From contig CM119384.1 in assembly GCA_051294905.1 (NCBI GenBank), forward strand, positions 24,738,001 through 24,802,000: a stretch of 64,000 bases of DNA. Reading direction: 5' to 3'. Positions 1,508 through 36,371 of this stretch are shown one piece after another; position 1 is the first letter of the stretch, and each line of letters begins with the position of its first letter. The translations under genes were made by a program, and so were the position numbers. The DNA is from Botryllus schlosseri. Lineage: Eukaryota. The notes beneath the pieces were generated by a model. The model was not told the DNA's origin, did no database searches, and saw nothing but the letters and a program-made list of their open reading frames with translations.

Positions 1508-1520
1508 TTGGCGCCTACAT

Positions 1521-2008
1521 CTACACAGATAGCTCTTGGTATTGTGTCTGACTATGGCAGGATTGTGACACGGTTCTCAGAAGATATCGATACAATTTGT
1601 CGTTTTTGTCATATTTACTCTTGAAGAGGAAGCAGCTAATTTTCTCCAGTGATCCAATCACTTTGGGTGCCAGAGCGGTTTGCTCCTTGTGCAGGAAGAT
1701 GGTTTTGTGCTTCATATTGGATCGGCGATGGTATTGCAGCAACAGCTGGAATTCAGTTGGTTCGTTTTGGTCGGCACCGCTAGACAGGTCTATGAACATC
1801 ACGATCACGTTGTTGTTGTTTTTGATGCTGTTTTGGAACCATTGCTGAAGCCCAGCGCTGACGATGGCCTTTGTATTGCTCCAACTGCTTCGAATTTGTA
1901 TTCCGAGTTCTCTGCTTAGCTGCTCCATGGAACTGTGGATCTCTTCCGTTTGTTTTTGGTCGATTGTGTTTGCTATCGCAATGATGGTTGTTTTATCATG
2001 TCCGGTGC
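1521..2008 (-). CDS. SEFIR-like cytoplasmic exon of paralogue Y
   Basis: Acceptor tttttcaag at 2010-2009, open 162 codons to TAG. LSRELGIQIRSSWSNTKAIVSAGLQQWFQNSIK..VIVMFI aligns with the X SEFIR exon and with the SEFIR core pattern (I..G...W...I...D.VIV). Confidence 0.75.
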
Positions 2009-5000
2009 CTTGAAAAATTTACAGCTGATATAAAATGTTTTCTAGCACTTTTAATCCTGGCACACGAACCGTTCTTAACACCACAGATGATGCAGATATT
2101 GATATAAAATAACAAGTCAGGCCATATTCACTGATGTCATGATTAGTTATTGTTTAATTTATTGCTTTGCTGGCTAGTGAATGTACGTTACCCAATTGAT
2201 ATAAAAGGTCTCTGATAAAAAAATAACACTGAAAATCTATCCTACAGATTTTTAGCCAATCAAAAACTACATCAAATTATCTTATTCGAACTAGATTTTA
2301 GTAATCCAGACTCTTCTTTGCGATATGGTATTGAGTCATGTCTTTGTAAAGTCAAAGTGCTCACCATTGGATTTTCTGCTCTTCCGTCTTTTTATAACTA
2401 ATACAGTGATCGCTAGCATTATCATTATCATCGCTAGCATTACAGTGAACACGCTTGTAATGATGACAATCGATTTCGATGTGTTCGATCCCAATGCAAT
2501 TTGGTTAGCTGCAAGTGAAAGAAGTATTTCATCCACAAAATATTAACTTGATATCATTTGTTCCATGTTCACTCAACTGTCTGTTGTTAGAGATTCCCAT
2601 GCTGTTGTTGCTGTTGTGCTATCATGACTGCCAATCTTATCTTTGCCATCTGCGAAGTAAAATTTAGGGGTTATGTTTCATTCTGTGTATGGGTATCAGC
2701 TTTTGTGTGAATAATGATTGCAGAAAGGACAGTAGCCTATGAATAAAAAAATCTTACTGTTTCTGGATGAGCTGACAGCTTCTGGTGCGTTTGGCTTCTT
2801 ACTTTGTGTCTTGGCAATCTTCTTCTTCCCTGTCCGATAAAAATCATAATTGGTTTGCTGACTCTCTTGTGATGTTTGTAAATCCTGTAATTTTACTGGT
2901 TTTTGATTTACGCTTCCCTGCTTTCATCTTCCTTGTCTCTCTTCCTACATGAAAGGGAGAGTGACATTTACCATAATGTGACTCAGCCTGGTGCAGGAAT
3001 TTCATGCCTCTCGTAAAAAATTTTACAAACGAAAAGTGCAGCTGATCGGCGACTGTGCTTGTTTTAATGTGGTCACAATGTGGTGTAGAACTCTTTACGC
3101 CAGATGTTGTTTTATCAAACTTCCATGTGCATTTTGGCATCTTAGACAGACTGTCCATTTTAGATTGATCAAATTCTGTTAGACACTATTGATTAATGCC
3201 CACAGTGTCAAACAGATCAAATTATCCTTGTTACTAACAAATGAAAACCTTCTAGCGGGCTTGTACTGGACTTTGATGTTGATTTGATATTTGCCTTTCT
3301 GAAATTTGACGTTTCATACCAAATTGCCTTTTGTACCTGGGATTTTGAAATTCTTTGTAGCGATTTGGTCATGATCGTACGCCTTCGGAAGAGGAAGCCC
3401 CTTGACTTCTATTCGGATGGAGTCATCGGATCTGAACGGTGTTCCACAGCGTATGAAATTGAAATGCAGGAATGAACTCTGTCACAAAAGAGCTGCAGTG
3501 ATTACGTTCGCATTCTTTTCAAGGATGGTTGACTTGTACAAACTACTGTAATCAAGTTAGTTGGCAGTCAATCAACTACTATTTTTTGAGTACCGTAATT
3601 TTCCGAATATAGTGCGCCCCCATGTATAATGCACACCCTTAAAATGGCGTGTAAATTCTGGGAAAAAGCCTGTACCCGTGTATAGTACGCACCCTGCATT
3701 CGCAGTACATGAATACTGAAGAGTTGTGTTTTAGTACACGATGTTGTTCTGTTTTGCGATGTCACTGTCGAACAATGATGACATAAACATCGCTAATAAT
3801 CATAATACAATTAACGGCATTGTCTCTTAACGAGAGTAGATAGTAGCCAAAGCCTGCGAGGCTGGCGACGCGATAGTTCAGGCTAGCGACACACGACATC
3901 TTGCGCACGAGGCCTATTACAATTACAGATGCGATTGCTCAGGCCAACGGTTATGTCGGGTCGCACCAGTCCTGTTGGAGATTATAGCTTAGGCACATGG
4001 CCTCTTGTGTATGCGATTGTTAAGGCATGCACATCCCCTCTTGTGTATGCGATTGTTAAGGCATGTCGGTTGCGCGATGAATCAGCAAGGATTGCTGTGC
4101 ATGCTTGTAGCAATCAGCGACTTAATTTCGCTCGCGTACAAACGGCAAACTAACTCAGCAAGACATCGCGTGCTGTGCAGACGACACTCATTAATTGGAA
4201 ACACGCTTTCCGTTAATTGGCAACACGCTTCTGTATTTGGCAGCACGTTTCACTCTATAATACGAATTACGGGGCACGTTGGCTAGAGGTGAGTGGCGAT
4301 GCGCGATTGGGAACAAACATGAAGAAAGGTGTGAATTCAAGTTTTTGGTCAAGGGAGATTTTTTTCAAGGCTTGCTGTACCCATGTATAATACGCACCCC
4401 CCTATTTTAGAGCAAAAAATTGGTAAAATTTTGTGCATTATACGTGGAAAATTACGGTAGTTCTAATTCTAGTTCTAGTTGCCCACTATGAAAATCTAGA
4501 AGTTTGTACAAGTCAAAATCAGACGGGTTACATGGTGGCTTGCAGACTTCCTAGGTACTGGTACCTGGCCTCCCGACGTGGTGTATTGCGTTTTGTTCGG
4601 CGTGATCTTGAATCGAGATTTGTATTTGATGTAAATCTCGTTGAATTCAAATCCGATGATGTAGCCCTCGATGTCTCCGCTTATAATATCCGATTCTGTA
4701 ACAACATATGAAACGTTGGTGGCAATGTGGAAAAATGCGTGTCTTGGTCTACAAGTTGAGTTGAGTTGGTCTACAAAATTTACAGCTTTTCAAAGTTTGA
4801 TTTGATGCAGCATTACACAGATTCTTCTCAACTTTTATTCCAAATTAGATTAGAATTGAAATTACAGAATTTGCCAAGAAAATACTACAGAAATCAGGCG
4901 CAGTTCGTATCAAATCTGAGATTGTTCATAAGCACGAGAATGACAAATGCCGGTACACCAATCTTGGGCTCGGTTCGAATTAGTCAGTTCTCCTATAACA

Positions 5001-8000
5001 TTTTCAGAAAACCACAAATTAGACTATTGCTGGTAAGGTTTATGTATTCACTGTCATCATTTAGTGCTGTCAAATCTTGCAATGGTACTCACCAAATATT
5101 TACCCCGATATGGTTAAAGATGAAAAACGGGCTTGGACCGAGCAGTTTTGATTTCACTTGGCATCATTTTTATAAATCACGCTATTGTGGTGGACATCTT
5201 ACCTCTCTGCTTCCATGAGATATTCATTTTGTTTTCGTGTCTGTTCCAATCAATTGACAAACCTTCTGGAGCGGGTGCTGGGGCTTTTGTGTGGTCGGTT
5301 TCCTCGTACTTTGTGTCATCTAAACAGTGTGAAAAGCACTATAATGATAGCCCTGTCTCTGATTGCATTTTCAATGATAAGCTGGTATCTATTGATTCTT
5401 TTATAGATTATAGGATGAGGACTATATTGACTACTCCGAATCTTTGTTACCAGTAACATAGATGGCTTTTCCTTTTATTGGCTATGGATAGTTCTAGTTA
5501 TCTTAATTTTAGTAATCCGCTACCATTTCCATCTTTTGAATTTTTTCAATTTCCATTAATTAAAAACACTTTCAGCCCGGTTCATATTTGCTCCCATTGT
5601 GATTGCTATATCAAAATTGGATTGCCAAAACAAGTAAAGACACCAGTAAATTTCCATTTGCTTTGAGGGAATTGTTTTCTTAACCAAAGCAATGCTGACT
5701 CGCATATGTGTCACTCTCCATTTTAATATGAGGTTAGGGTTCTTGCTAATGCTGGTAGAAATGTTGGTGGTTGCATTATCTTAACTGAGAATAAATATCT
5801 CGTTGTGGGTTTAGAATTCATGTTGATTTGTCATTTCCGAAAGATTACGATATCGCAATCCTATTGTGGCTCAGCCACGGAAGTCAATGTGATTTCCAAG
5901 TAGGAGAAATCATTAGGAAAGCCAGTCTCCAGGTACCAGTAGTTGTTTACACCTACAATAAATTTACTGATTCTGATTTGTGAAAGTGATTATCAATTTC
6001 TTTGGTGTAAATCCACATCAATTTGATATGGTTTCGCTTTCGTTGTGAATGGAAAATATGCTGATTCGAAGCAGTCCTTTTTCAGAATTACTTGAGTGAT
6101 GGATTTCAATCAAGTTTTTGTGATCGGTGACATTTATTACGCTGTGACACACTGGCATTGAGTGGTATTTTTTCACATTTGATGAATTTCATAATGATCC
6201 ATCCAAGATGGGTTCACATTTAATAACACTGGGCAACAATTTTAAACAAAAAATTTGTTGATTTCGATTTGGCACTTGATTTAGGCTAATTTTGGCGTGC
6301 TGATTCCAGAAATGCCACTGGTTTTCTTCTATCACACCAAGTTTTTGCTCTACGACATATCCCCAAAATATGCAAATTTTCACGGATTTAGTCATATCAC
6401 TTTTCCATGCCATATAAAAATCCACACTTTTACCATATAATAAGTTATCTAGCCAAGGGTTCAATTGAATTATTAAGAATAAAGGTAGTGGTATCGATCT
6501 AGTAGGCCAATGCTTTCTCCCATTTTTGGTTAGAGGATGCAACCATCCGATGATATTTCACAGCACACATATTTGATGCAAACTGCAGGAGATGGCAAGA
6601 AAAATAATCATTACATTTACTCTCAGCTATGGGTTCAATGCCCCATTCAGCTTATCCGGTGTACCGTAATTTTCCATGTATAATGCGCAAAATTTTCACG
6701 ATTTTTTTCCCTAAAATCGGGGGGTGCGTATTATACATGGGAACAACACGCTTGAAAAAAATGCCTCGATAAAAAACTTGAAATCACACCTATCTTCATT
6801 CTTCATGTTTGTTTCCAATCGCGCATCACTTTCAGCCATCGTGCGTAGTAATTAGTGGGAAGCGTGTATCCAATTAACGAGAGTCGTGTGCAAAAGCACG
6901 CGATCTCCTGCTGAGTTGGTTTGCCGTTTGTACGCGAGCGAAATTAGGTCACTAATAAGACACTCGTGCGTGGCAATTCTCGCCAATTCATCGCGTCAAC
7001 GACAGGCCCGAACAATCGCATACGCAATTTATACATACACAAGAGGCCATGTGCGCAAGATATAATCGCTTGCGTAATCAGTCGCATCTCCGACAGACCT
7101 GTTGCGCATGACATAACCGTTCGCCTAGGCGCAATCGCATCTATAATAGGCATCGTGCGCAAGATGTCGGTTCGTTGGCCTAAACTAACTCGCCGCCGGC
7201 CTCGCAGGCGTTGGCTGCTATCTACTATCGTTTAGAGATAATACCGTTAATTGTATAATGATTAGCAATCGCATCTGTAAAAGGTCTCCTCGTGCTCAAG
7301 ATGTCGTGTCGCTAGCCTGAACTATCGCACCGCCCGCCTCGCAGGCTTTGGCTGCTATCTACTATCGTTTAAAGACAATCACGCTAATTGTATAATGATT
7401 AGCGATCGTTGAGTAATGATTGTTCAAGAGTGACATCGCAAAACAGAATGACATCGTATACGAAATCGGAACTATTCATGTACTGAAATGCAGGGTGCGT
7501 ACTATACATGGGTACAGGCTTTTTCCCAAAATTTACATGCTATTTTAGGGGTGCGTATTATACATGGGGGCGTACTATACTTGGAAAATTGCGGTCACTT
7601 TAAACTGCTATATGCTCGATAATTTGGATCAAGATGAAGATCTTAGGGATAGCAGGCCTAATGATGTAGATTTTGAAATTGAAAATGATTCAGAATGTAG
7701 AGTAGTCCATCAACACTAATTATTGATCTGACATAGGCTTTGGGACTTGGCATAGAAATTTTCGGAACTTTTTACATCCTTACAAAGTGAGAAAAGATTG
7801 CTTGGCAAGGTAGAGAAGGTATCTCACTTTCGATCAAGAGAATCAGCCTTTTCTTCGTTGGCCTATTTTCGGTAGCTTTGATTGCTGTGATTCTGGTATT
7901 GGCATGATACTGTCACCATGGATTACTGGAGGAGTTAGGAATCCCCATTAAGAACTCAAGTCAATGACAAATGCCTATAGGCAGCTCAAGAGGATCCTAA

Positions 8001-9336
8001 AGTGTGGCATTCTCTAAAATGGCAACATCTTAAGTGCAGTAACAATTGCACACTCAGTGACTCTTCGTGAATAATACAGAAACATTGAGAACAATACAGA
8101 AACATAGAATTGTTGCAATATTAAGAGCACAATTGGATCGTATGTGTCAGCTTTGAAACATTGTGTTTTCTTTGTTTTTCGGACAATAAGGATGCACGGT
8201 ACATGCAGCCCTGATACACATGTGCCACTGGCTCACTGCCATATGTTTATGTCGGACAGCAGACATTAAAAAAAAACTAAAATATCTTGATAATTTCCCT
8301 GAAGACCTTGACATAGTCAGAGATGGCCAAGGAGAAAATGTCTCCCAACATCTGAAGATGATGGGGATAAGATACCAGAGTAGATTTGAGCTTACATATG
8401 TTAGCTGATTGTTGCTCGAGTATCAAACTAGACAACCTACAGAATTATGGGTTATTAGCGTGAATTTGGACCCTGAAACTCGCACTTTATTTGTCCTGTA
8501 CAAGCAATATCAGTTTAAATCAACCAAATAAAGCAGTGCAAATGTTTATTTGAAGTCTAATGATTTACTTTCGACTGGTTGTAGTTTTTGAAACGTTTTA
8601 TACAATAAACACAAAATATTAAATGTAGTGCTATCATGTGGGTTTTGAGGCAATGTGGGGGTACCTAACGCAAAAACTTGACGTGATAGAGAAAAACGGA
8701 AGTCATTTTTGAATTCAGCGCCCAAAAGTTAGTCACAATCGATTGCCTGATCAAATTCAACAAAAACTGTGTTGACAAGTGTAATCCGTTAAAATGTAGT
8801 TTTCTACAAAGATGCTGTGAGTTTACTTAACTCAAATGTATCTGGAATGCCAAATTAAATGTTGATTTTCGTCACATTCACAAATCTATGTTTTGCCTAT
8901 TTCTGTCACTACAGGAACTTTTGTTTTCACCTTGGGCTTGTAACTCAATACTGAAATTCAATCCATGTATGTAGGTCATAGCACCTCAACATATCGCTGT
9001 GATGGTGAACCAATTCAAAACTTCCTACTTCTAAGTAACATTCTAGTTGCATAGGACATAGTTATGTTGTGTAACGGAATAAATTCCGGTTAAATGCGAA
9101 GACCGTGATCTCAATTTTGATGCATAGTTAGTAAATGCAATACTTTATCTCAGTTTCTACATCCACCTGTAGTGATTTCAGTATCGGCACTTACAGTTCA
9201 CATCGCAGGTGAAGTAGCTCCCATCTTCGAGGATGACGGATTCTTCCCTTTTGTAGCATGATGAATCACATCTTACTGTGGCTGCGGGATTTAGAAAACT
9301 CAGCATAAGCACTATATTGGTGACTTGAAAGCTCAT
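1521..9336 (-). CDS. IL-17 receptor-like SEFIR-domain type I membrane protein, paralogue Y copy A (potentially intact, ~514 aa spliced model)
   Basis: Phase-compatible GT-AG exons: 9336-9195 (signal peptide MSFQVTNIVLMLSFLNPAAT + C-x3-C-x10-DG-x4-C-x-V), 5319-5203 (PEGLSIDW..NISWKQ, FnIII-like), 4695-4565 (GDIEGYIIGF), 3478-3337 (IRIEVKGLP), 3175-2972, 2944-2912, 2829-2758, 2649-2578 (basic/S-T stalk), 2508-2365 (TM + KRRK), 2008-1521 (SEFIR). No stop in this chain. The exon1-to-5319 join and the 3337/3175 boundaries are inferred. Confidence 0.6.
3529..4516. mobile_element. CTAGAACTA-family MITE interrupted by a Tc1/mariner-type MITE
   Basis: Ends ttgacttgtacaaact / agtttgtacaagtcaa match the 1036-1507 family. 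A remnant without the nested insert is present in unit B (~21530-21605). Confidence 0.55.
3593..4457. mobile_element. Tc1/mariner (pogo/Tigger-like) non-autonomous element
   Basis: TIRs ccgtaattttcc / ggaaaattacgg flanked by TA (3591-92, 4458-59). Empty site in unit B (~21545). Internal 36-bp tandem at 4001-4065. Second copy inverted at 6664-7594. Confidence 0.85.
6227..8781 (+). mobile_element. Chapaev3-like (CMC) DNA transposon relic with decayed transposase
   Basis: Ends cactgggcaac / gttgacaagtg, ~120-bp imperfect inverted termini, 3-bp TAA TSD (6224-26, 8782-84), absent from unit B (~23300). Broken transposase pieces SELFTSLQSEKRLL..VSHFRSRESAF, HGLLEELGIPI, RILKCGIL*NGN, YLDNFPEDL..DGQGE..QHLKMMGIRYQ. 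Superfamily call rests on the TWA TSD and remembered motifs. Confidence 0.75.
6664..7594. mobile_element. Tc1/mariner-type MITE nested in the Chapaev3-like element
   Basis: ta|ccgtaattttcc ... ggaaaattgcgg. Reverse-complement homologue of 3593-4457. Confidence 0.8.
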
Positions 9337-10945
9337 AATTACTAAATACCAGTCGGGAAATGAAGTCAGTATTTTACACTGTAGGCAAAAGTTATGTTAA
9401 TTATCGACCTCTAGTATTTATCTCTGAAATCTTGCCTCTTCGTCTGCAAACCAGTTAGTAATATTTGCTTCTCATTTCTTATTATTCTAGTATTTGAGAT
9501 ATTTCACCATTCTGTACTCTCTACCAAACCTGGTATAATAACTCAAGATGTGTGAGTCAGCACCTCAGACTCTCTTCTACGGCTGGCTGAGGCTTCTGAT
9601 ATCGCACAACAATTGGTAAAACAAGTATATCTACCGCCTTTTCTCTCTTGTATTTTCCTTCTTTGATATTTGCTCAGACCACAAAATTTTGGTTGATTGA
9701 AAAGCATTTGATGATAATTTTGACAGTGTGACACTTTAACCTCCATTGCTTGGCACGAAGGTAGTAGGTACATCTACAGGTGGCCGAATATAAACCATCA
9801 TTGGCAATTGGCATAACTCATAAATATTACTATTCGGTGACTTCAAACAAGGTTTTTCTCATAAATATTGGTAGCCGTGATACATGTATTATAGTTCAAT
9901 AATATCTTACCACTTTAGCCTATAGACTATAAAAGTATCTTCCTATTTTATTGACTTAGTCTTCATGAATTTTCGTCTACTTGGAACATTAAATTTCAAC
10001 CACACTTTTTCTGAAAATATTGATGGCATATTACATCTGATCTGATAAGTAAAGATAAATTTCCATTCGCAATTAGTCATGAGATTACCATTTCCGTTGT
10101 AACAACACATATTAATGCAGCCTGGTAGCATACGACTTGAGTTTATTCTCCTGTAAAGTCTGTGTTTTATTTATTCCATTGGTATAAATGCCCTGAGGCC
10201 TGATATAAATACCCCTGGTAGATCCCATCCCATTGCATTTTGTAAAAGAAAATTTAATTTACTCCTTCATTATAAAAGAAGCTAATCAAAGCAGTTGTGT
10301 ATTTAGTACAGTTGATTGTTATCCCTAGCATGTCAATGCATCAAATGAAATCATACACCCTCATACTGGATGATAAGTCTTGCTAGTGCAACGAATGCAA
10401 TGCACTAGCAACTAATGTACAATTGCACATTTCTCTCCCATATCTAAAATTGGATTAGGGAAGTGTCTGTAAATTATAAATGCATCTTTGCGAATATGAA
10501 ACATGAAGTCGTCTTGAGCAATTCAAAATCATCATTTTCTCAATGATCAGCAACTTTTTGCAAAACATAATGTAATAAACTTCACAGATTTTGCTGCCAA
10601 TATCTGAGATATTGCAAATACGCCGTGCTTTCATGAATGTCCACATTTTAACGTGGATGTAAATCCCGATTATTTTGTGTAACTTGAAGTCCTGTCATCA
10701 GCCGATGGAGTATTCCATAGAATTAGCTATTATTTTGAATTTTCGTTTCAACATTCTGAAATTTCTGTTGACATGCACAGTGCATGAGTGTTAGAAGGAA
10801 GGGAGACTTTTGAATGCTTATTAATTCACAGGGATTACCGGGTCTAATCCAGCCCGAATGCAATCACTCTTCTGACACCAATATCTCGGCAACTCTTGTT
10901 GTTGCTGTGTAGGACCCATTTACTTGGCTTATTGCACTTTCGTTT

Positions 10946-11460
10946 TCAACCACGTGACCTCTTCATGCAAAGTCTTTTTATGTACTGAAAAAAGTCATCT
11001 TCCTCCGTGTAATCACTCTTCAAAGCAAACATTGTGAAATTCTTGAGTGCTTTGTGATCATTTGGTGGCTTGCTTTTAGATGCTTGCAGTAAAATACTCG
11101 TCTTTTGATTGCTATGCCTGTGATTAAAAAAGTGATTCCAGAATACTTGAAATTCCGTCTCCTGATCTTGATTGATTTGTGTTAAGGAGATGAAAATGAT
11201 GATGTCAGCCCTTTGAATCTCTCTTTGAAACCAAGGCAGCGACCCTATGAGGCTTATTTGGTTTCGATCTCTCCAATTACTTCGCATTGTAAGCCCAAGA
11301 TGTTGTGACATGATTTCCATTGTTGTGTGATACCTTTGGACCTCGTCAGAGTCTTCCATGTTGGCTATGGCAAGGATTTCTTTCAGGCCTGCGAAAATAT
11401 GATAGTCGTGTGTGGATATCCATGATAACGGATAGGCTATTGAGATTTTGGGCTGTGAAC
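10946..11460 (-). CDS. SEFIR domain exon of paralogue X (copy A)
   Basis: Acceptor ttcttag, 171 open codons. PKISIAY ~ SEFIR box1 PKVFIVY. RDRNQISLIGSLPWFQREIQRADIIIFI ~ SEFIR core (NEIAEIGPVAWLERQIQEADKVIVV, recalled consensus). Confidence 0.82.
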
Positions 11461-20223: not shown

Positions 20224-20443
20224 ATACTAAACAGTAAACATTATTACTTGGATTACTTACCTAATTAATATGAAAGGTCCAGGGGCGACGAACTTTGATA
20301 AAAAAGAGCACTGAAAATCTATCCTACAGATTTTTAGCCAATCAAAAACTGCATCAAATTATCTTATTCGATTTAGATTTTAGCAATCCAGGCTCTTTGC
20401 GATATGGTATTTAGTCAAGTCTTTGTAAAGTCAAAGTGCTCAC

Positions 20444-24286: not shown

Positions 24287-24725
24287 TAGTGGTCGACCGA
24301 TTATCGACAAGGCCGATATTTAGAGCTTTCCCGATATCGCGGCCGATATTTTATATTCGAAAATTCAATGCTCCGTGTTCTCAATCTCAAGAAATCGACG
24401 ACGCATAGGGCTATATATGACTGATTTACCCTCTCAGGACGAGTTTAGCTGGGTGATCATGCAGGGAAACTATGCTTCCTGCATATCCCAAATTTCATCG
24501 AATGTGCACAATTAAGCAATAATTCTTTTCAATTTCAGTTTTCTCGTTTGTTGTTCAGCTTTCTGTGGCATGTTCAAGTGCCATCTTGCCTAATATATAA
24601 TATTTTTGGTGAAATTGTTCTCTGCTCCTTCCATATTGATATCGGCCTATGATATCGGTATCGGCCTTGTCAGTGAGCCGATATATCGGTATCGGCCTGT
24701 AAAAATCAATATCGGTCGACCTCTA
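24287..24725. mobile_element. hAT-type MITE
   Basis: TIR tagtggtcgaccgat / atcggtcgacctcta. TSD gtaggtac / gtaggtat. Empty site in unit A (~9763). Confidence 0.85.
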
Positions 24726-25858: not shown

Positions 25859-26373
25859 TCAGCCACGTGACCTCTTCATGCAAAGTCTTTTTATGTGTTG
25901 AAAAAAGTCATCTTCCTCTGTGTAATCACTCTTCAACACAAACACTGTGAAATTCTTCAGTGTTTTGTAATCATTTGGTGGCTCCCTTTTAGATGCTTGC
26001 AGTAAAATACTTGTCTTTTGATTGCTATGCCTGTGATTGAAAAAGTGATTCCAGAATACTTGAAATTCCGTCTCCTTCTGATCTCGATTGATTTGTGTTA
26101 AGGAGATGAAAATGATGATGTCAGCCCTTTGAATCTCTCTTTGAAACCAAGGCAGAGACCCTATGCAGCTTATTTGGTTTCGATCCCTCCAATTACTTCG
26201 CATTGGTAGCCCGAGACGTTGTGACAGGATTTCCATTGTTATGTGATACTTTTGGACCTCATCAGAGTCTTCCATGTCGGCTATGGCAAGGATTTCTTTC
26301 AGGCCTGTGAAAAAATGATAGTGGTGTGTGGATATCCATAACAGATAGACTATTGAGCTTTTGGGCTGTGAAC
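25859..26373 (-). CDS. SEFIR domain exon of paralogue X (copy B)
   Basis: Acceptor ttctcag, 171 open codons. ~87% aa identity to the copy A exon, with two single-codon indels. Confidence 0.82.
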
Positions 26374-27218
26374 CTGAGAAGTAATGTAGAAATAACTTTA
26401 TCACTTTTGCTTGTCATCAGTATGAAATGATTAGATAACATGACTTCTTTCTACTAGCAGTTTTTATATACTAATAACTCCCATGTAAACTTATGCCATT
26501 GAATGAAATGAGGAAATAGGAATGCTTATCTTGAACTGGTTTTAGGGAGGTTTATGTACATATAAGCAGAGTCAGACTGATCTCGAAATTGTGATAACAT
26601 TGCCTAAGGAAAGATATGTGTCCCACAGAAAAATATGTTATACTCTTAGTGTAGGAATCTGAGCCAAATTGTACCCCAGTGATTGCTAATTTCATACATT
26701 TTTTAGTTTTTGTCCAGCTATCAATGTCACTGGTAAAAATAGATGCCTGCCTTAATAAATACTACTATATATCGGGATTGCAATTTTGTGAGTGATCGTA
26801 CCTCTCTTCCGTTTCTTCCATATAATTATGGCCACTGTCACGGATATCGTTAACGTGACCAGCGAAAACGATACTACAACGGGAATCCCCAAGCCACCTG
26901 TAAAGGCATTAACAGAACTGTCATTTCATGTGGAATTTTGCCTGGTCTTGTTTGTTTAAGTCCGTGGCAATCTATTGTCTGGTGTGAAGTCATTTGTCAC
27001 TATTAGATTCTTACCATTACCTGTTTTTCGTCTTGAGGTGGTTTTTGTATTGACTGCAAGATTTGCTGCAAAAGAATGTGAAAAGTGACCTTTCGACCTC
27101 CCTACCAAGTCAATATGTCATGTGGTACATACTTGCTGTCGCCATACTGGTGTATTCTTCAATTACTGTAGAGTGAAAGACTTGTTGGTTTGTTTTCCAG
27201 ACAGTGAACAATAGTTGA

Positions 27219-27266
27219 ATGGTTGTAAATATGGTTGTAAATATGGTTGTAAAAATGGTTGTAAAA
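27219..27266 (+). repeat. 12-bp minisatellite (atggttgtaaat) x4
   Basis: Four adjacent units, expanded only in unit B. Confidence 0.8.
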
Positions 27267-30200
27267 TATCTAAAATTTTCACCACAACCAAGTTGCCAAA
27301 AAGTAACACAATACGAGGCCAAGGTAATTTGAGACAGATATATGAGATTGTTGTTCATTTTTGCTTCCCTGGAAGCAGCTGTTTACCAGTCATTCTTCTT
27401 CACCACCACACTGAGCAAGGTATTGTTGCTTTCTGAGTCACTCATTTCTTCTATACTGAAGCCATGTCGGATATAGGGATAGGAATCCTAAGTTGATGGG
27501 TGTATAGGAATCTCCAGCGAGGCATATAAATATAAGCTAGTCCTACTCATCAATTTTTTTTCAAACAATCCAGTCTAGAACAAATGAACCCTACCAATAA
27601 GAGCCTGCATTGAGGGTAAAATTGATATCATACCAGTCAATTCGCCGCCTACATCACCAGTGCTCCTTGCATTGCCTCCACTCACGTTCTGTCCTGTTAA
27701 TGAATGATAGCTGTTGTCCTGACTTTTCCATGCATTCTAAAACATTGCTTCCAATCATGGTACATCTATGCTCAGATAGATTACTTTATATGGTTTGGAT
27801 TTTCATGCTAATCATGACATAGTAGCCTATTTTTAGTTTTATCGCCACCATTTGGGGAACAAATGCATTTCTTTCCGTGTTGAGCTATTTTAAGATGAGC
27901 ATATCTGTGTTCATGTCTAAATGTAGCATACCCAGACTAACAATATTCCATTTGAAAGCTGTCTGATAAAAGGGAAAGCATTGCTTTTATGCCAGAGCAT
28001 AATGAGCGGCAAAATGCATTTTTGTCCACATGATAACTGCTTATTCAAATAAATATGCACAGGGGGTGTTTTATGTTTTGCTTTCCAATTATAGCATCAC
28101 ATGATCGAGGTCTAATCGCTATCATCTATTCATCATTACTGGTTTCAAATATTCACCTCACATGGTCCCTCTGAATAGGACATGAAATTCGCCATAAATC
28201 ATCAGTGCTATTAAAATATGGAACGCACTTGGTATTTTCACGTCTGCAGCTATCCTTCCCATTCTATGATCCATGTCTGCTGGTGGAATGGAATCGATGG
28301 TGACTTGTCTCTGATCTTCTGGCTTCAGGTAGTCAAGGGTGAGTCCGTGGCAGAGAAATTGGAAAGCTATGTAGTCATACTAAAACAATGATAACAAAGT
28401 TATTCACGATATCATGGGATATAATGACAACTGCAACTTGTACGTCCAGCTATAATAATCAAAATAGGTGTAATGCCGTGTAAACGATATATGACAACAT
28501 TGTTTATTTGTGTTTTTGGTAATTTATGCTTATTTACAATCTCAGCAAGTGGAGAAATTTTGACGGAGGCCATGTTACATAATAAAGATGTCATACTGCA
28601 ACCAAATAATTAGTTTAATGGTTCTTGAAAACATTTATTTCACCCCCTCATGAACTGTTGCATATGCTGTACTTGACTTTATTATTAATTTGACTGCTAC
28701 AGAAGTAAGCCTTCAATATCCAGATAAAGGCAAATATAGAATATTTGGGCCGAGCACAATGATTCGCATACTCTAATATCAATTGATAATTATTACGAAC
28801 GATTTAAGTCGAGTAGTGAGGGATGATATTTTCGAGTACTGAAATTGCACGCTCCTTGCCACAAATTTATCAACGAGAAATCACAGTTTTGATGCTATTT
28901 TCCACTGTAAAACCTGGATTGGTCGTATCGCAGCATACGAAACCTGTAATTCAATGAAAATAACATTTTTGTGAAGTTGTTATGACAGTTTAGTGCGATG
29001 AAATAAATATAGTTGAAAAGATAACAAATAATCATGAATGTGATGTAGAATTGATATTATATTCTTTGTGGCCTTGCATGAAAGCTCCATTTTGTCAATG
29101 CTGCATTATGAAGAGGGCCACTAGCGCCACCTTGTTGTGGCTCCAGAATGCATATTTTCTGAGCTAGCAGTATGACAATTGTCTTTGTTCATTCCGTCTC
29201 ACTTCTCTAAATTTAGGAATGTAAAGCTTGTACCATAACTTCATCCCCTCTTAGAACTTCTTTGTGTCTTTTCCCCTTCGTCCGCACTTTCACATGGTAT
29301 CTCATCGTCATTTCACCCTTTATCACTGTGAGATAGTAACCTCGCACATCTTCCACATCCCTTGCTGAGAAAATTTCCTAACATTCAATGTGGTTAAATT
29401 GAAAGTTGATCACAGTCACAGAATTTCTGCCCTTCATGTAATTTCTCATGGTGTTATGTTTTGATTACGCAGCTTCCATTTGGAAATTTCTTAACTGAAT
29501 CACATAAGTGAGATTTCCATTACTGATAATGCCAGTCTGAGATTCTGGTTTTGGATTTTGTTTACTTGGCAGGGCACAAAATGTATGCAGAAGATGGGTA
29601 ATTATTCTAGTCTCTGGAAATTCTTTTCACCATGTTTAGGCTACTGGGAATACATTCCTAATCTCATTTGTGTTGGCTGTGAAATTCACATTGGTCAGTT
29701 TTCTTAGCCAGACAGGTTCGATTGAAGGATTGACTTGCATGGTCTACATCGTAAATGAATAATCCACCCACCTTTTTGCTTCCATGTTATGTTGAGTGCT
29801 ATGGTCTCATTATGGTGGACATACCACATGTTGTCGGTAATTAGTTCTGGTTGAGGTGCTATGCCCTTCTTGTGTGCTCTGGGTGGTCTTTTTGGCGCTA
29901 TAACGCAAACATGCCGTATCAGAGTACACTGGTATTTATCGGCCACACTATTGCTCTGCTGGTTCTACAAAAAAGTTTCTTGTAACCATCCTTACAATAC
30001 TTGAACATTGACTGCTGCTGCATTGGTATTTTAAAGAGTATGGTAAATCAAATTGGGTAATATCAGAGTAGCATGGTATTGCTATATTGCCTGCAGGATT
30101 GATGCTAATATCCATCCCTGTCCAGGATGTGGCCCACACGAAAACGTCACAATTACAACAGTCTACAGCCTTAATTACTCAGATGATCTGTTTAAATTCA

Positions 30201-30793
30201 TGTTTGATACGGAGCTAGCCTAACCTGATGCTCAGTCCGAATTTCCCAACGAACTTTGTTATGAACTGATAGAATTTAACCTTACATGAAACATTGCAAT
30301 AGAGCTTCCGTCCGTCTTGCAGTAGAATGTAATCTTCTTGTTTATGACACTCCGATATGCATTGTAGTGTTTTCGTCACCAAGGCTTCACAATCCAACAG
30401 CATTAGGTAAATACACAGGGTGGTAAAAAACTTCATTAGCTCCTCAGTTTCCCAATATCTGACTAGTATAGGATATGTAAAATAAATTCCAGATATTATT
30501 CATCACATAACGTACTAGATCTTGTATCTAAAGCTTAATGAATATACAATTTTGTCACACAAAACAGGCAAATACTCCAGAGTACCTAGTAATCCTTTAA
30601 AAGGAGTAAAATGCACATACTGAAGTTCTGGCAGATTGATTCAGGAAACTCTCATGTAGATATGGAATATAACTATAAAGTTAGTTTAGAAATGTTTGCG
30701 TTTTCTAGGAATTATTCTACCTGCTAGCACCTTTCCAACCCAGTATTAGCTACAGGTATTAAAACTATCGCAGATGGAAAACATAGTCCGATC

Positions 30794-33430
30794 CAGGCGC
30801 GTAGCCAGCCGAAAAATGAGGGGGGGGTTTCGATTTTTTCCGAATTTAGTAACGTAGCATTGACTCATTACGGTTAAGTACATGCGATGCGTAAATAACG
30901 ATTACACAACATCCCCGTGTTGGCGATTATAGGCGTACGATAAGCTTTTCGACGAGTCCGGAAGTGCTGTTAATTAGCGACTCCCTGATCTGTCGTGAAC
31001 AATGAAATACGCACGCGTCGAACATTTGAATACGAGCGCTTATCAACGCGCTGAACAATTAAATTCGCGCGCTTGTCAAAGCGTCCAACAATTAAATACG
31101 CCCGCTCATCAATGCGTCTTGCGTCTTACGTAGCCTCGGCGACGATTTAGGCAAGTAAAAATGTACGAGTTTTTATGGAATATGTGCTATAATGACGCCG
31201 ATTTCAGGTGGTTCAAACCTTTACCTCTTATAACTCAAGCCTACTGGACTATAGCTGAAGACTAGTGGAAATCAATTACGCATGTACGCACGCGTCGAAC
31301 ATGATTGCGGACATTCGATGTCATTCAGTTACGAGATGTAACTCTGTAATCACAATCGCTAATCAGCATATACTTGATAGCATTTTATCTAAGCCATCGA
31401 TAGGAGCCGAAGCATGGTAGGCCCAAGACGCGGTAGTTAGGCTAGCGATATCTTTAGTACGAGGCCTATTCCGGATGCGATTGTGTAGGCCTACCAAGAT
31501 ATCGTCCACACCAAGCCAATGCAGATGTGATTGTGAAGGCCAGTGACGATATCGCGCGCCGCGGGCCTATTGCAGATGTGATTATTCAAGCCAGCGGAAT
31601 TAGGCTTGTTGGAGACGCGGTAAATCAGGCTAGTAATGATTGCCGAGCGCGCGACAATGAATGACCTGATTTCGCCAATCATCTCAGCGGGAGATCGTGT
31701 CGCGTTACACTGTGCAGTAGGGTTGTTCAGATTTGAAAAATTGTCAGGAAACTTCGATGCTTGTGACCAACATGATGGTTTAGTACATAAAAACACTTTT
31801 ATGAGCAATTTTGGTCATCTTCATCGTGATCTTCTATCCCCGAAAACCCCCCAAAGATCCACGGGGCAATTCTCCTTACTACTGGATATGTAATGTTGAC
31901 CACGTCACCGGTTTATAGCTTTTGCGACGTTATCAGTTGAAAACGGCCGTGTAGAGATAATATATTGCAATAAAATAGCCATGTTCTCAAAATTGTACTT
32001 GAATGCAGTCCTATAAAGGCAGCGTGCATATCGATTTCACTCTGCACAACCTGTCTATTATGCTCATGGGAATCATGTATTGGTTGCACCATTGACATCG
32101 GGTTATTTTGGATCGTACATTGAAGAAACGCCGTTGCGTTGCAATTCGTGAAGAAACACCGATATTCCCAGCTAGTTTTCAGCCATAAGGTGTTATTCAA
32201 AGGTATGTAATGTCAGTAATACTTTTCTCAATTTCAAATCATCTGTAAAATACCGAGTTATCTTATTTTATGGTGGACTGCAATTTAGTTGCAGCAGAAT
32301 GTCTGAAACAAAGCGGATATGAGTTTTGCTGACCAACCATGAACAAGATTCAGGTCTGCCCACTATTTGGTCTGATATTCTGGTCACTATTCGGTGGGAT
32401 ATTTTTTTGAGTGTATTAGTCACTCCAAGTTACCGACTCTAGATGAGGTTCTACTATATCCGCCATATCTAAAAGAAAATTGCTCCGAAACTACCACAAC
32501 GCAGGACTGTGTCATTCTAACTGTTGAAGAGGTTGCCAACGTATGGAATATAACAAGAATACCTATAAGGCAAGCGCTGAACATTGTGTTGATGCATTGT
32601 TTCAGGCATTCTTCTTCAACTAAATTGCAGTCTACCATAAAATAAGATAACTCGGTATTTTACAGATGATTTGAAGTTGAGAAAAGTATTACTGACATTA
32701 CATACCTTTGAATAATACCTTATGGCTGAAAACTGGCTGGGAATATCAGTATTTGTTCACGAATTGCAATCCAACGGCGCTTCTTCAATGTGCGATGCAA
32801 AACAAGCCGATGTCAATGGTGCTACCAATACATGATTCCCATGAGCATGACAGACAGGTTTTTCTGAGCAAAACGGAGATGCATGTGGCCTTTACAGGAC
32901 GGCATTTAAATAAAATTATGAAACCATATCTATTTTATTGCAATATCTCGTCTCTACATGACCGTTTTCGAACGATAACGTCACAAAAGCTATAAACCGG
33001 TGACATGGTCAACACTACAGATCAAGCAGTAAGGAGAATTGCCCTGTGGATCTTTCGGGGCTTTTCGGGGATAGAAGATCACGACGAAGATGACCAAAAT
33101 TGCTCACAAAAGTGTTTTTATGCACTAAACCATCATTTGGGTCACAAGCATCGAAGTTTCCTGACAATTTTTTAAATCTGAACAACCCTACTGTGCAGTG
33201 CAATGCGCACAGACGAATCTCGCTAATTAGCAACACGTCTTTCGTTAATTGGCCGCGCCTTTCGTTAATTCGCCGCGCACAATACTAATAATATGACTTA
33301 TTGAATTGCAAACGAGTATTAGCGTCAGAGCGGCCATTTAAAAAGAGCAAGGTTTCGCGTTTAAGGAAGGGGTTCGCGTTTCTAAAGGAGGGGGTTTCGA
33401 CCCCCGAAACCCCCCCTGGCTACGCACCTG
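30794..33430. mobile_element. hAT-type non-autonomous element carrying a nested foldback insertion
   Basis: TIR caggcgcgtagccag / ctggctacgcacctg. Perfect 8-bp TSD gtccgatc (30786-93, 33431-38). Empty site in unit A (~15808). Sister copy at 38461-39633. Confidence 0.9.
31718..33190. mobile_element. Foldback element with ~600-bp inverted arms (hATm-like, tentative)
   Basis: Ends tagggttgttcagattt / aaatctgaacaacccta. Perfect TSD ctgtgcag (31710-17, 33191-98). Arms ~31718-32315 and ~32598-33190. Spacer encodes KLPTLDEVL..EVANVWNITRIPIRQ, resembling a transposase N-terminus. Absent from the sister element at 39390. Confidence 0.88.
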
Positions 33431-36016
33431 GTCCGATCTTATACTTTAAATTTCATGAGTAGGTAACTTGATCATAGCATTGATAAATCGGTTTACAAAA
33501 TCGGATCGGTAATTCATAAAACCTTTTGCACGTTTTCAATCCTTCTATCTTAGAGCATATGTCTCGAAGCAAGTCCTTTCTTAGTTTAACTTTTTTCCTA
33601 GTGTTATAATCCTTAGTTTCAGCACCTTGTCCCAACAATGTTGTATCTCTTAATATTGAGGCAAACTTTCTAAGAGTAGACATTTATGGTGAGTTAAGTC
33701 ATAGGCGTGCTAGTCTATATACTATACTCACTGTTTACCTTTCCATGGTACTTTAACATCCGAGGTGAAAGAGGGGATATGAAAGATGAATGAAAATTGG
33801 GGTAATGTTGTTTGCTGCTGGTTTAGAGATGGGAGACAAGAGAGTTAATTCCCTAAATATTTACTGAAGTGACTTTCTGATAAGTTCCGCTCTGTATTCT
33901 AGATATGGTCTGGAAAATATGCCCCTATGATATGGAGTATGAGAGAGTGATTATTCAGGCGAGTGGAGATATCCCATGTGTATTTATTATGCATCAAATG
34001 TGTAGAGTTACATATTAACTTAACTATAGTGTCAAGCATGATGTTATCATATTGTGATTCAAAAAAGTGTATTCCTTGTAGTGAGTCAATCTGTGACCAT
34101 GTTCAAAGAATAAGTCTCATCTCTCATTGAATATGTCTGGTTTTCTTTCAACTAAGCAGTAGAACCTGAAATATGATGGTGATCTGGACAATTAAACATC
34201 TCACTTGAAGCGCAAGAAACACACCTACTGCAACCTTATAGCAAACCAACTGGATATGAAGTCGTGAAACTGGTCTGTTGATAGATAACAGACAAGATGG
34301 TCGTTTTTCACTTGTCTAATCATAAGAAGTGTGTAGTGTGCTTGCATTCGATGCTCTGGTAATCACATTTTGTGAAATAAACCTGTTGATTTGGAGAATT
34401 CCGGTTGGATTAAAATCGTCTTGTGTTAAGCACGAATAACTAAATATATCGAAGGACTGCAATAAACTGACATTGCGAAAAGTGTATTTCATAAATGAAC
34501 ATAACAAGCACACCAATCAAAATATTGTGCCAAACACGATTTTGTCAAACCATTTTACGTGAAAACATATCTGATAACACCACTAGTGTTGATGAGTTTT
34601 GATAGGGATCTGTCTACAAAAATAGGCAGAGAACTGCTGAAGCAGCTCAGTGAAACAACCTAACTCAAATAAAGGAACTGCAACTCTACTCACTAAAACT
34701 GCATAAGTTGTTTCATCATAGCAGGATTAGTTGATGATTAGCTCTCCCGTTACCACTATGCCATCTGTTGAAATGAACTTCATGATAGCCTGCATGTCGG
34801 AATATCAAGTTTCCACTGATGTGGATATGGTGGTCCAGCTCGGGGGGGTCACTGTGAATATGTTGCTGGGTTGTTATTATGATGGCAGTGTCACAATTTG
34901 TAATACATTCGGTAACTAATATATAAATAATATCAAGAACACTCCACAACCCAATGCTTTCGTTTATGCTTGTAGTCCTGTGAATCTATATTTGGTTGAA
35001 ATAAAATGAAATTTCACCAAAGTTGTAACTACTAATTTTCAATGTTATGCAATCCTGTAAGTTTTCAATTCTATTTTGACTTTCCTGTAATATACAAGCC
35101 TCTGGTGGTCACGAAATCACTTCCGTCCTCGCTCTTACAAATTTCGAACAATCATGGCAGACTAGTTACTGTAACCATTAAAAATCTGACCTTAGCACTC
35201 TATGTAAATATTGACTGCTAAATGGTAATTAAAGACAATTTTTGTATCTTTTATTGAACTGGGCTATAAAAAATGGGGAATAATGTTTGCCATCCACGTG
35301 AAGGGGTAAAGGATATAATACCTGTATGAGGCCACATGTTTTCGCTTTGCATTTCCGGATATCCCCGATTATGGTTTCAGGTCTGTCATAATATGTTGGT
35401 CACGTAAACTGGCAGCACACCTGCGTTAATATTTCACACGAAGTGATCGTTAATTTAGTATATTTCTGTCGGCTAGTAACCCAGTAAAAACACATGATGA
35501 ATATGTACATATTTGAATAATTATTACAGCAAGGTAACATTTTCTATAAGACAACGTTTGATCTATTTGTACTTGTTCCTAAATACTACATAGCAAGTTT
35601 TGGAAGAATACTTCGAAAAATAGGAAATTTATCAGATCCAAGCACTGTAACACAGGAAAGAAATTGAAATTTAATAAAAAATACTATTACAGCAAGAAGC
35701 CACTTCTTGATCTTGAGTTTACCATTTTTGTTCAAACGATCACCCCTGCTAAAATAAAGTACTGTAAAAGTTGTCTCAAGATTGGTTTTGCATATTTACA
35801 TGACAAAATATGCATGTTTATTGTGTGTTTTCCGTCCATAATTTTGTCATTCCAACTACAGGATACTCTGTAAACCAATTTTTTTTATTTAAGATAACAG
35901 TACATATTTTTTTAAAAAGGAATTTTCAAAGCGAACAACAGTGTAAAGGCTAGGAACCCCCAGATTAGTGCGAAATACTTGATCAGGTATACTCGTCAAT
36001 TCAGTGGGCCTCACGC

Positions 36017-36350
36017 CAGGGTTGTAATGACTCGAGTCATGACTTGACTTGAGTTGAACTCAAGCTGCTATTTTACATTGACTCGACCAAGTCATATGAC
36101 AAAACATGTTCTATATTCAACTGTCTAATAGCAGAACCAATAATTGAAAAATAGGCACAGAAACTGCCTTTTATCTCTTTGTGTAATCATGTTTGAAGTG
36201 AGGACATGAGTATACTATCAGTGCGAGGCTTTCGATATCTCCCAAGAATTCCAGAGAAGAGGTTGAACCTGACTTGAATTCGGACTTGACTCGAGCCAAA
36301 ACTAGAAAAGTCAAATTGACTTGTGACGTTATGACTCGGTTGCAACCCTG
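36017..36350. mobile_element. GACTCGAGTC-rich hAT-type MITE
   Basis: TIR cagggttgtaa / ttgcaaccctg. Degenerate 8-bp flanks (cctcacgc / cattatgc). Same family as 51186-54587. Confidence 0.72.
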
Positions 36351-36371
36351 CATTATGCATTGCCCTTTCAG

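What the first reader, a model, noticed from the sequence alone, without database searches (positions are those of the whole stretch)
1521..36371. Tandem cluster of four IL-17-receptor-like (SEFIR) gene copies lying antisense within a probable >36-kb NUP98-96 intron
Seen: two paralogues (X, Y), each in two copies, with signal peptide, a shared C-x3-C-x10-DG-x4-C-x-V motif, an NIxWKQ exon and TM; three end in SEFIR exons (~30% identity X vs Y by eye). The first recognisable Nup96 exon (36372) starts mid-domain behind an acceptor, and no Nup exon was recognised upstream. Established: SEFIR domains define the IL-17R/SEF and Act1 families. Inference: an immune-receptor array undergoing birth-and-death evolution, nested in an essential housekeeping gene.
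Basis: partly seen in the sequence, partly recalled or inferred. Interest (0 to 1): 0.85.

Follow-up and report, generated by a model that had tools for sequence, protein, structure and literature searches.

The report
IL-17-receptor-like gene cluster inside NUP98-96 intron
Four copies of a very divergent, ascidian-specific IL-17-receptor-like gene lie antisense inside one 36-kb intron of the nuclear-pore gene NUP98-96; RNA contigs confirm the intron and show that one copy is expressed, making this a lineage-specific variant of a known receptor kind in an ordinary nested-gene arrangement.

Summary

**Duplication and copies.** An ~18-kb tandem segmental duplication (2210-20223 / 20293-36282) carries two minus-strand paralogues, which I call A and B. 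They are 30% identical, and each is present twice.

**The intron.** A spliced RNA contig joins the NUP98-96 exon ending at window base 8 directly to the exon starting at 36372. Bases 9-36371 are therefore one 36,363-nt intron that holds the whole cluster.

**State of each copy.**
- A1 is transcribed. Eight GT-AG junctions are supported by RNA, and the model gives an open 451-aa type I membrane protein.
- B1 and B2 give open 366-aa models with conserved splice sites (dN/dS 0.34).
- A2 keeps eight intact exons but lost its last exon at the duplication breakpoint.

**Domain identity.** The cytoplasmic domain misses the Pfam SEFIR cut-off (13.7 bits against 23). It folds confidently, however, and Foldseek ranks IL-17RB, RC, RD and RE SEFIR domains first. 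The ectodomain of the Styela clava homologue gives IL-17RB and IL-17RA ectodomains as its best matches. The proteins have a single FnIII-like domain and no second one.

**Distribution.** The family is confined to a few ascidian sequences. A third member lies on contig C3 near a Maestro-HEAT gene, as in S. clava.

**Not tested.** Immune function and ligand binding were not tested.

The parts
1..8 (+). Last 8 nt of a 121-nt NUP98-96 (Nup96 part) exon spanning window -112..8. The donor GT is at 9-10, phase 1.
   Evidence: RNA contig X6 record 8 covers exactly L024 489-609, which is window -112..8. Splice-site context is ttcag|GAC...TCCG|gtaatt.
9..36371 (+). Single NUP98-96 intron of 36,363 nt that hosts the whole receptor-like cluster.
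   Evidence: The loose end behind L024:609 reads ATACCGTCCTCGAGTCGTATTTGGCACTAA, which occurs once in the window, at 36372-36401, directly after ...ccctttcag. The phases fit: G+AT gives Asp.
36372..36665 (+). Next Nup96 exon (..LALSLCRALWGNL..). It aligns to human Nup96 residues ~391-470. The 3' end is predicted, not RNA-supported.
   Evidence: All PDB hits (three, E 0.13-0.48) are Nup96 / Nup98-Nup96 chains. The Pfam Nup96 domain follows at 37012-37194.
672..9336 (-). Gene A1, a 9-exon, 451-aa receptor-like gene that is transcribed. Exons: 9336-9195 (predicted), 5319-5203, 4695-4565, 3478-3337, 2944-2897, 2829-2758, 2649-2578, 2508-2365 (transmembrane), and 2008-1524 plus a 3'UTR reaching at least 672.
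   Evidence: Eight CT..AC (GT-AG on the minus strand) joints appear in RNA contigs of two studies, and a few raw RNA-seq reads support two of them. The reading frame is open and all splice sites are canonical.
1524..2008 (-). A1 last coding exon, encoding the SEFIR/TIR-like cytoplasmic domain.
   Evidence: 32% identical to the B copies. It matches S. clava P0006 residues 283-344. It is one of only three such exons in the genome.
10949..15407 (-). Gene B1, predicted minimal 6-exon model of 366 aa: 15407-15257, 14807-14682, 14302-14172, 13329-13176, 11995-11900 (transmembrane), 11388-10949.
   Evidence: The frame is open and every AG/GT site is conserved with B2. No RNA was laid on this gene.
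20444..23851 (-). Gene A2, a copy of A1 exons 1-8. All eight are intact, with in-frame deletions of 3 and 15 nt. The SEFIR-like exon is absent because the duplication starts at 20293, which corresponds to 2210 inside A1's last intron.
   Evidence: Reading through the last donor gives ..KSNGEHFDFTKT followed by a stop.
25862..30436 (-). Gene B2, predicted minimal 6-exon model of 366 aa: 30436-30286, 29897-29772, 29364-29234, 28379-28229, 26897-26802 (transmembrane), 26304-25862.
   Evidence: The last exon gives an AF2 model with pLDDT 82.8. The RNA-type runs X6, X8 and X10 hold 35-41% of this stretch's sampled words, which is only indirect evidence of expression.
2210..20223 (.). Tandem duplication unit 1.
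   Evidence: Self-BLAST of the window.
20293..36282 (.). Tandem duplication unit 2. It ends 90 bp before the Nup96 acceptor.
   Evidence: Self-BLAST of the window.
30795..33431 (.). Repeat or transposon-like insertion found only in unit 2. Its ends are 92-94% identical to a copy at 38462-39634 in a downstream Nup96 intron, and it has an internal inverted repeat.

Best explanation
The interval holds a lineage-specific (ascidian) subfamily of short IL-17-receptor-like type I membrane proteins.

Each protein has, in order: a signal peptide; a Cys-knotted N-terminal motif; one IL-17R D1-type fibronectin-III-like domain; a short or low-complexity stalk in place of the second FnIII domain; one transmembrane helix; and a very divergent SEFIR-type (STIR superfamily) cytoplasmic domain.

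An old A/B gene pair was duplicated again by an ~18-kb tandem segmental duplication. This gave A1-B1-A2-B2, all on the minus strand, entirely inside one 36,363-nt intron of the single-copy plus-strand NUP98-96 gene.

Shown:
- the intron, by a spliced RNA contig;
- transcription and splicing of A1;
- open frames and conserved splice sites in all four copies;
- loss of the signalling exon in A2 at the duplication breakpoint.

Inferred:
- A1, B1 and B2 bind some of this genome's many IL-17-like ligands through the D1 domain and signal through homotypic SEFIR-SEFIR contacts with an Act1-like adaptor, as vertebrate IL-17 receptors do;
- A2, if expressed, would be a membrane-tethered, signalling-dead decoy;
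- the intronic position is a by-product of insertion and duplication in a permissive large intron, not a functional coupling to NUP98-96.
For: **Nesting.** The PF04096 exons and all PF12110 exons occur only at this locus, on the + strand, on either side of the cluster. The upstream Nup96 exon matches PDB Nup96 chains at E 6e-9. The RNA contig joins window 8 to 36372.

**Gene models.** A1 has 8 RNA-supported GT-AG junctions and an open 451-aa frame. B1 and B2 have open 366-aa frames with all sites conserved. A2 exons 1-8 are intact. dN/dS is 0.34 for B1/B2 and 0.52 for A1/A2.

**Cytoplasmic domain.**
- The AF2 model has pLDDT 82.8 and pTM 0.81.
- The Foldseek top PDB hits are the IL-17RB SEFIR domain (3vbc, E 2e-4) and the IL-17RA/RB/ACT1 complex.
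- Swiss-Prot AFDB ranks 1-5 are the SEFIR regions of IL-17RB, RC and RD.
- hhalign against four bona fide SEFIR domains of the same genome gives E 1.5e-4.
- Pfam SEFIR gives sub-threshold hits in 3 of 7 family members, best E 0.0047.
- Language-model neighbours are TIR and SEFIR/TIR clusters.

**Ectodomain.**
- The S. clava homologue P0006 has a weak IL17R_fnIII_D1 hit and a weak SEFIR hit, in the right order.
- It has the same 9-exon layout as A1.
- Foldseek top PDB hits for its D1 model are IL-17RB and IL-17RA ectodomains, and IL-17RA residues 77-189 in AFDB.

**Ligand context.** The genome has at least 24 IL-17 domain matches above the Pfam cut-off.
Against: - No copy reaches the Pfam SEFIR gathering score (13.7 bits against 23). 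The genome scan with PF08357 missed them.
- hhalign probability is only 51%.
- VIA-align Z-scores (11-12.4) are tied among an IL-1RAcP TIR domain, SEFIR domains and generic flavodoxin-like enzymes.
- The ectodomain model has low confidence (pLDDT 57.5), belongs to the S. clava homologue, and gives E-values of only about 1e-3.
- There is no second FnIII domain.
- The B1, B2 and A2 models and A1 exon 1 are predictions without laid RNA. Small stalk exons in B may have been missed.
- Ligand binding, adaptor binding and immune expression were not tested.
Confidence: 0.72

Rival explanations
1. The cytoplasmic domain is a TIR-type (or other STIR/flavodoxin-like) domain rather than SEFIR. The genes would then be a new kind of TIR receptor that only resembles IL-17 receptors.
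For: - The top VIA-align hit is the IL-1RAcPb TIR domain (Z 12.4).
- The nearest named language-model clusters are mostly TIR_2.
- P0006 has a weak TIR_2 hit at E 0.021, equal to its SEFIR hit.
Against: - Foldseek (3Di+AA) ranks SEFIR domains first in both PDB and Swiss-Prot AFDB.
- SEFIR is the only Pfam family hit by several family members.
- hhalign aligns the domain to SEFIR domains of the same genome.
- The ectodomain's best structural and Pfam matches are IL-17R D1, not LRR or Ig as in TIR receptors.
Confidence: 0.12
2. The cluster is mostly decaying. Only remnants are transcribed and the copies are pseudogenes on their way out, which is the 'death' side of birth-and-death evolution.
For: - A2 has lost its signalling exon.
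- A1/A2 dN/dS of 0.52 is relaxed.
- A1 expression is low in raw RNA-seq, with only a few junction reads.
Against: - Every exon of all four copies keeps an open frame and its GT/AG sites despite 10-20% neutral divergence.
- All indels are in-frame.
- B1/B2 dN/dS is 0.34, and 0.26 in the transmembrane and SEFIR-like part.
- A1 is correctly spliced across 8 introns in two independent studies.
Confidence: 0.1
3. The antisense nesting is functional. Transcription of the receptor cluster and of NUP98-96 interfere with or co-regulate each other, for example through antisense pre-mRNA overlap.
For: - The A1 3'UTR (reaching at least window 672) ends within about 660 nt of a NUP98-96 exon.
- The related S. 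clava genes are also antisense inside a large host gene, a Maestro-HEAT gene.
Against: - Nested antisense genes are common in animal genomes without known coupling (established knowledge).
- The host differs between the two loci (Maestro-HEAT gene versus NUP98-96), which argues for opportunistic residence in large introns.
- Nothing here tests expression correlation.
Confidence: 0.08

Closest known systems
Vertebrate IL-17 receptors (IL-17RA, RB, RC, RD, RE)
   Same: Type I membrane topology. A D1-type FnIII-like domain with the 'I-x-W ... (E/R)G-x-x-L-x-V ... Y-x-V-x-V-x-x-LP' strand pattern; that pattern is recalled from memory, while the fold match rests. A cytoplasmic SEFIR-like alpha/beta domain follows directly after the transmembrane segment.
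   Different: - Only one FnIII-like domain. The second domain (D2) is replaced by a short stalk, which in A1 is basic and low-complexity.
- No SEFIR extension or C-terminal tail.
- Sequence similarity lies below Pfam thresholds for both domains.
- The proteins are 366-451 aa, against 500-870 aa in vertebrates.
Styela clava LOC120344280 (XP_039269349, 'uncharacterized protein') and its tandem paralogue
   Same: The same 9-exon layout, Cys motif, D1 motifs, transmembrane segment and SEFIR-like domain. They are arranged in tandem and lie antisense inside a large host gene.
   Different: Only 25-26% identical to A1 and B2. The host gene is a Maestro-HEAT (MROH) gene, not NUP98-96. The true orthologue in this genome lies on C3 at 17.82 Mb, near the Maestro-HEAT hits.
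Nested (intronic, antisense) genes in animal genomes
   Same: Whole genes with their own splicing lie inside one intron of a host gene on the opposite strand.
   Different: Here the guest is a four-gene tandem array that enlarged the intron to 36 kb, in a gene whose neighbouring introns are about 0.3-3 kb.

Membership tests
IL-17 receptor family | Cytoplasmic SEFIR domain (Pfam PF08357) at or above the curated score | tested here: not met
   - Best window copy: 13.7 bits, E 0.076, against a cut-off of 23.
- A1 and B1 give no hit.
- Best family member: E 0.0047.
- The genome scan with PF08357 lists 12 matches, none in the window.
IL-17 receptor family | SEFIR-type fold of the cytoplasmic domain | tested here: met
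   - AF2 model: pLDDT 82.8, five-stranded alpha/beta fold.
- Foldseek top hits: IL-17RB SEFIR (3vbc) and the IL-17RA/RB/ACT1 complex.
- AFDB Swiss-Prot ranks 1-5: SEFIR regions of IL-17RB, RC and RD.
- hhalign against SEFIR domains of the same genome: E 1.5e-4.
- Caveat: VIA-align Z-scores are tied with TIR and flavodoxin-like folds.
IL-17 receptor family | Extracellular IL-17R FnIII-like domain D1 (PF16556) | tested here: inconclusive
   - Pfam gives 14 bits against a cut-off of 26, and only in the S. clava homologue.
- Single window exons give nothing.
- The AF2 model of P0006:54-216 has low confidence (pLDDT 57.5), yet 9 of its 10 best PDB matches are IL-17RB or IL-17RA ectodomains, at E 1e-3 to 7e-3.
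IL-17 receptor family | Second FnIII-like domain (D2) between D1 and the membrane | tested here: not met
   In the RNA-supported A1 model, about 75 low-complexity, basic residues (three exons of 48, 72 and 72 nt, plus the start of the transmembrane exon) separate D1 from the transmembrane segment. In the B models D1 abuts the transmembrane segment.
IL-17 receptor family | Type I topology: signal peptide and a single transmembrane helix | tested here: met
   Hydropathy scan: one transmembrane segment (A1 residues 251-283, B2 residues 185-214), plus an N-terminal stretch of above-average hydropathy that reaches the 1.6 segment threshold in B2 (1.66) but not in A1 (mean 1.15). No dedicated signal-peptide predictor was available.
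IL-17 receptor family | Binds IL-17-fold ligands and recruits Act1/CIKS | not testable with these tools
   Context only: at least 24 IL-17 domains and several canonical SEFIR genes exist in the genome.
NUP98-96 (host gene) | Autoproteolytic domain, then the HF|SKYG cleavage site, then the Nup96 helical domain, in one transcript | tested here: met
   - PF04096 exons lie at window -9694..-7219.
- The exon at -6885..-6523 contains 'NHFSKYGL'.
- PDB Nup96 match at E 6e-9.
- PF12110 exons lie in the window.
- An RNA contig bridges -695 to -112 and 8 to 36372.

The most novel reading that the evidence does not exclude
A previously undescribed 'short' IL-17R subfamily, with a D1-only ectodomain and a minimal divergent SEFIR domain, has diversified in stolidobranch ascidians alongside a large IL-17 ligand expansion. 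It has repeatedly settled antisense in giant introns of housekeeping genes. The duplication breakpoint created A2 as a ready-made membrane-tethered decoy that modulates signalling by A1.
Probability: 0.15. Interest if true: 0.6.

Novelty: new variant of a known kind. Interest (0 to 1): 0.42.

Why it matters
These are uncharacterised ascidian genes; the only database relative with a name is labelled 'uncharacterized protein'. This work gives them a probable identity as minimal IL-17-receptor-like proteins, with an RNA-supported gene model for one copy.

Ascidians have many IL-17-like ligands but few recognised receptors. Divergent receptors that escape Pfam could fill part of that gap. They would also show how far the D1 and SEFIR modules can be reduced.

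The nesting itself is a well-documented example of a gene array inflating an intron of an essential gene more than ten-fold. It is not a new phenomenon.

Tried and rejected
- **Pfam on single ectodomain exons:** no hits.
- **phmmer of P0006 against PDB sequences:** only a transmembrane-helix artefact.
- **phmmer of the small Nup96 exons** (-898..-683 ORF, exon end -695; and -112..8) against PDB: no Nup96 hit. Their identity rests on the RNA contig instead.
- **The search for homologous proteins with P0005 and P0006:** returned only P0005, i.e. the same S. clava protein cluster. One call failed on a parameter limit.
- **Fragment alignments A4, A5 and A6** were misaligned and were not used. Only A7 was folded.
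- **Windowed B1/B2 identity** did not separate exons from introns.
- **PF23227 (HEAT_MROH2B_C)** found nothing in the genome, so I could not show that the C3 copy lies inside the Maestro-HEAT gene.
- **IL-17 ligand in the window:** no Pfam IL17 match at E <= 1 in the genome scan, and the ORFs at 62900-64000 show nothing obviously IL-17-like by eye.
- **P0004** is a TPR protein and a spurious hit.
- **P0002's contig** could not be fetched.
Full report
**Location and host gene**

The window is G000:C14:24738001-24802000, in a 495-Mb genome. The Nup96 Pfam domain (PF12110) matches only three exons in the whole genome, all inside the window on the + strand. The NUP98 autoproteolytic domain (PF04096) matches only two exons, 7-10 kb upstream of the window on the same strand. 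NUP98-96 is therefore single-copy.

I fetched 30 kb of upstream sequence and read the + strand frames. They show:
- the autoproteolytic-domain exons at window -9694..-9431 and -7503..-7219;
- an exon at -6885..-6523 containing 'NHFSKYGL', the HF|SKYG self-cleavage site, followed by the Nup96 N-terminus;
- an exon at -1919..-1647 containing 'SFRVGWGPNW', which matches Xenopus and human Nup96 chains at E 6e-9 to 2e-7 (Nup96 residues about 240-284);
- further open frames at -898..-683 and -118..70.

Nup96 coding exons thus lie on both sides of the cluster.

**The intron is proven by RNA**

I laid four runs on L024, which is window -600..5399. A 3093-nt contig of run X6 matches exactly L024 489-609, which is window -112..8.
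- Its unmatched continuation on the 3' side reads ATACCGTCCTCGAGTCGTATTTGGCACTAA. This string occurs once in the window, at 36372-36401, right after the acceptor ccctttcag.
- Its continuation on the 5' side matches window -724..-695 with one mismatch, and a GTAAGT donor follows directly.

The exon at -112..8 has canonical splice sites, and its phase-1 donor fits the acceptor at 36372. Bases 9-36371 are therefore a single intron of 36,363 nt. Neighbouring introns measure about 0.3-3 kb.

**Structure of the cluster**

Self-comparison shows a tandem segmental duplication: 2210-20223 against 20293-36282, in collinear blocks of 71-90% identity. Unit 2 carries an extra 2.6-kb repeat-like insertion at 30795-33431. 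Each unit holds two minus-strand genes, which I call A and B.

Translated comparison of A against B finds only two similar blocks:
- the Cys-motif exon;
- the last exon, at 31.5% identity over 92 aa.

**Gene models**

*A1.* The same read-laying run gave eight joints with CT..AC ends, which are GT-AG on the minus strand. They come from contigs of two studies (X6, X17), and a few raw reads of X23 support two of them. After the tool's stated one-base shifts, all eight are canonical. With a predicted first exon (GTAAGT donor), the nine exons give an open 451-aa frame. In order, the protein has:
- a leader peptide;
- the motif RCDSSCYKREESVILEDGSYFTCDV;
- '..MNISWKQR|ESDIISGDIEGYIIGF..' and '..FLHFNFIRCG..IRIEVKGLPLPK..NFKIPG';
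- three small exons encoding a basic, low-complexity stalk;
- a transmembrane helix followed by KRRKSRKSNG;
- a 160-aa C-terminal domain.

*A2.* It retains exons 1-8 with every splice site, an open frame and only in-frame indels. It has no last exon, because the duplication begins inside A1's last intron.

*B2 and B1.* I found a six-exon chain with canonical sites and compatible phases in B2, giving 366 aa. All of its sites and the frame are conserved in B1. Small stalk exons may be missing from these two models.

*Selection.* Nei-Gojobori dN/dS is 0.34 for B1/B2 (0.26 in the transmembrane plus C-terminal part) and 0.52 for A1/A2. dS is 0.12-0.21 and intron divergence about 0.09-0.15.

**What the proteins are**

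*By sequence, the C-terminal domain is nearly an orphan.*
- Pfam SEFIR scores only 13.7 bits, against a cut-off of 23.
- A PF08357 scan of the genome finds 12 other loci but not these.
- A profile search of 1.84 billion representative proteins returns five hits: three short fragments from public-run assemblies, one Styela clava protein (XP_039269349, 'uncharacterized') and one spurious TPR protein.

*Independent lines converge on SEFIR/STIR.*
- Language-model neighbours are TIR and SEFIR/TIR clusters.
- hhalign against four canonical SEFIR domains of this genome gives E 1.5e-4, probability 51%.
- A confident AF2 model (pLDDT 82.8, pTM 0.81, five-stranded alpha/beta fold) has the IL-17RB SEFIR crystal structure and the IL-17RA/RB/ACT1 assembly as its top PDB matches by Foldseek.
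- In Swiss-Prot AFDB, IL-17RB, RC, RD and RE SEFIR regions take 9 of the first 22 ranks, including ranks 1-5.
- VIA-align Z-scores (11.1-12.4) are tied among an IL-1RAcP TIR domain, SEFIR domains and flavodoxin-like enzymes. Geometry alone therefore cannot separate SEFIR from TIR.

*The ectodomain tips the balance.*
- The full-length S. clava homologue P0006 (453 aa) has sub-threshold hits to IL17R_fnIII_D1 and to SEFIR, in the right order.
- It has the same nine-exon layout as A1.
- A low-confidence AF2 model of its D1 region, aligned with the window's exons (pLDDT 57.5), has IL-17RB and IL-17RA ectodomains as 9 of its 10 best PDB matches. In AFDB it matches IL-17RA residues 77-189.

No second FnIII domain exists. 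I therefore describe these genes as IL-17R-like, working like a minimal IL-17 receptor. I do not call them certified family members, because two defining features (the Pfam-level SEFIR score and the D2 domain) were tested and not met.

**Distribution and origin**

- The A/B profile finds only the three window copies in this genome.
- Searching with P0006 reveals a third subtype at C3:17.820-17.826 Mb on the minus strand, with E4, transmembrane and SEFIR-like exons. It lies between the Maestro-HEAT Pfam hits at 17.78 Mb on the + strand and a canonical SEFIR exon at 17.87 Mb.
- In S. clava, P0006 and a tandem paralogue lie antisense inside a Maestro-HEAT gene, next to a gene with a Pfam SEFIR hit.
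- The C3 locus is thus probably the ancestral, syntenic one, and the NUP98-96 cluster a secondary locus.
- A 6-kb contig from another species (SRR23343704) carries a B-like last exon followed 2.6 kb later by an A-like first exon. The B-then-A pair therefore appears to predate the recent duplication.
- The genome has at least 24 IL-17 ligand domains above the Pfam cut-off, and none lies in the window.

**Mechanism**

*Shown:* antisense nesting in one intron; A1 transcription and splicing; intact frames in all copies; loss of the signalling exon in A2.

*Inferred, from established IL-17R biology:* ligand binding by the D1 domain; SEFIR-SEFIR recruitment of an Act1-like adaptor; A2 as a possible decoy.

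Nothing supports functional coupling to NUP98-96.

**Verdict**

Its novelty is moderate. It describes a divergent, lineage-specific short variant of a known receptor kind, in a nested-gene arrangement that is common in animal genomes.

Noticed in passing
G000:C3:17820838-17826334 (L026/L027): A third member of the family lies on another chromosome. It is the likely orthologue of Styela clava LOC120344280, on the minus strand, between the Maestro-HEAT Pfam hits (17.78 Mb, + strand) and a canonical SEFIR exon (17.87 Mb).
   Followed up: partly
window 3592-4459 and 6662-7595 (A1 intron 1): Inverted repeat copies of a repeat. RNA contigs pile up on 3600-4400 at word depths up to about 1000, which suggests a highly expressed or multi-copy transposon-like element.
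   Followed up: no
window 30795-33431 and 38462-39634: A 2.6-kb insertion found only in duplication unit 2. Its ends are 92-94% identical to a copy in a downstream Nup96 intron, and it has an internal inverted repeat (31701-32314 against 33207-32594). It is probably a recently active DNA transposon.
   Followed up: no
whole genome (G000), mainly C2:13.9, 16.7-16.8 and 21.7-21.85 Mb: A large expansion of IL-17 ligand domains: 24 matches over the Pfam cut-off, arranged in several tandem clusters.
   Followed up: no
The ORFs there show nothing obviously IL-17-like.
   Followed up: partly
L024 1529-1562 (window 928-961): A 32-nt stretch is replaced by a single A in RNA contigs and reads. It is probably an indel polymorphism in the region downstream of the A1 stop codon.
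   Followed up: no
window 36300-37300: Two short segments of this 1-kb query (its last ~65 nt, window ~37220-37300, and its first ~55 nt, window ~36300-36355) recur at 39 other places in the genome at 76-90% identity, so they are dispersed repeats.
   Followed up: no
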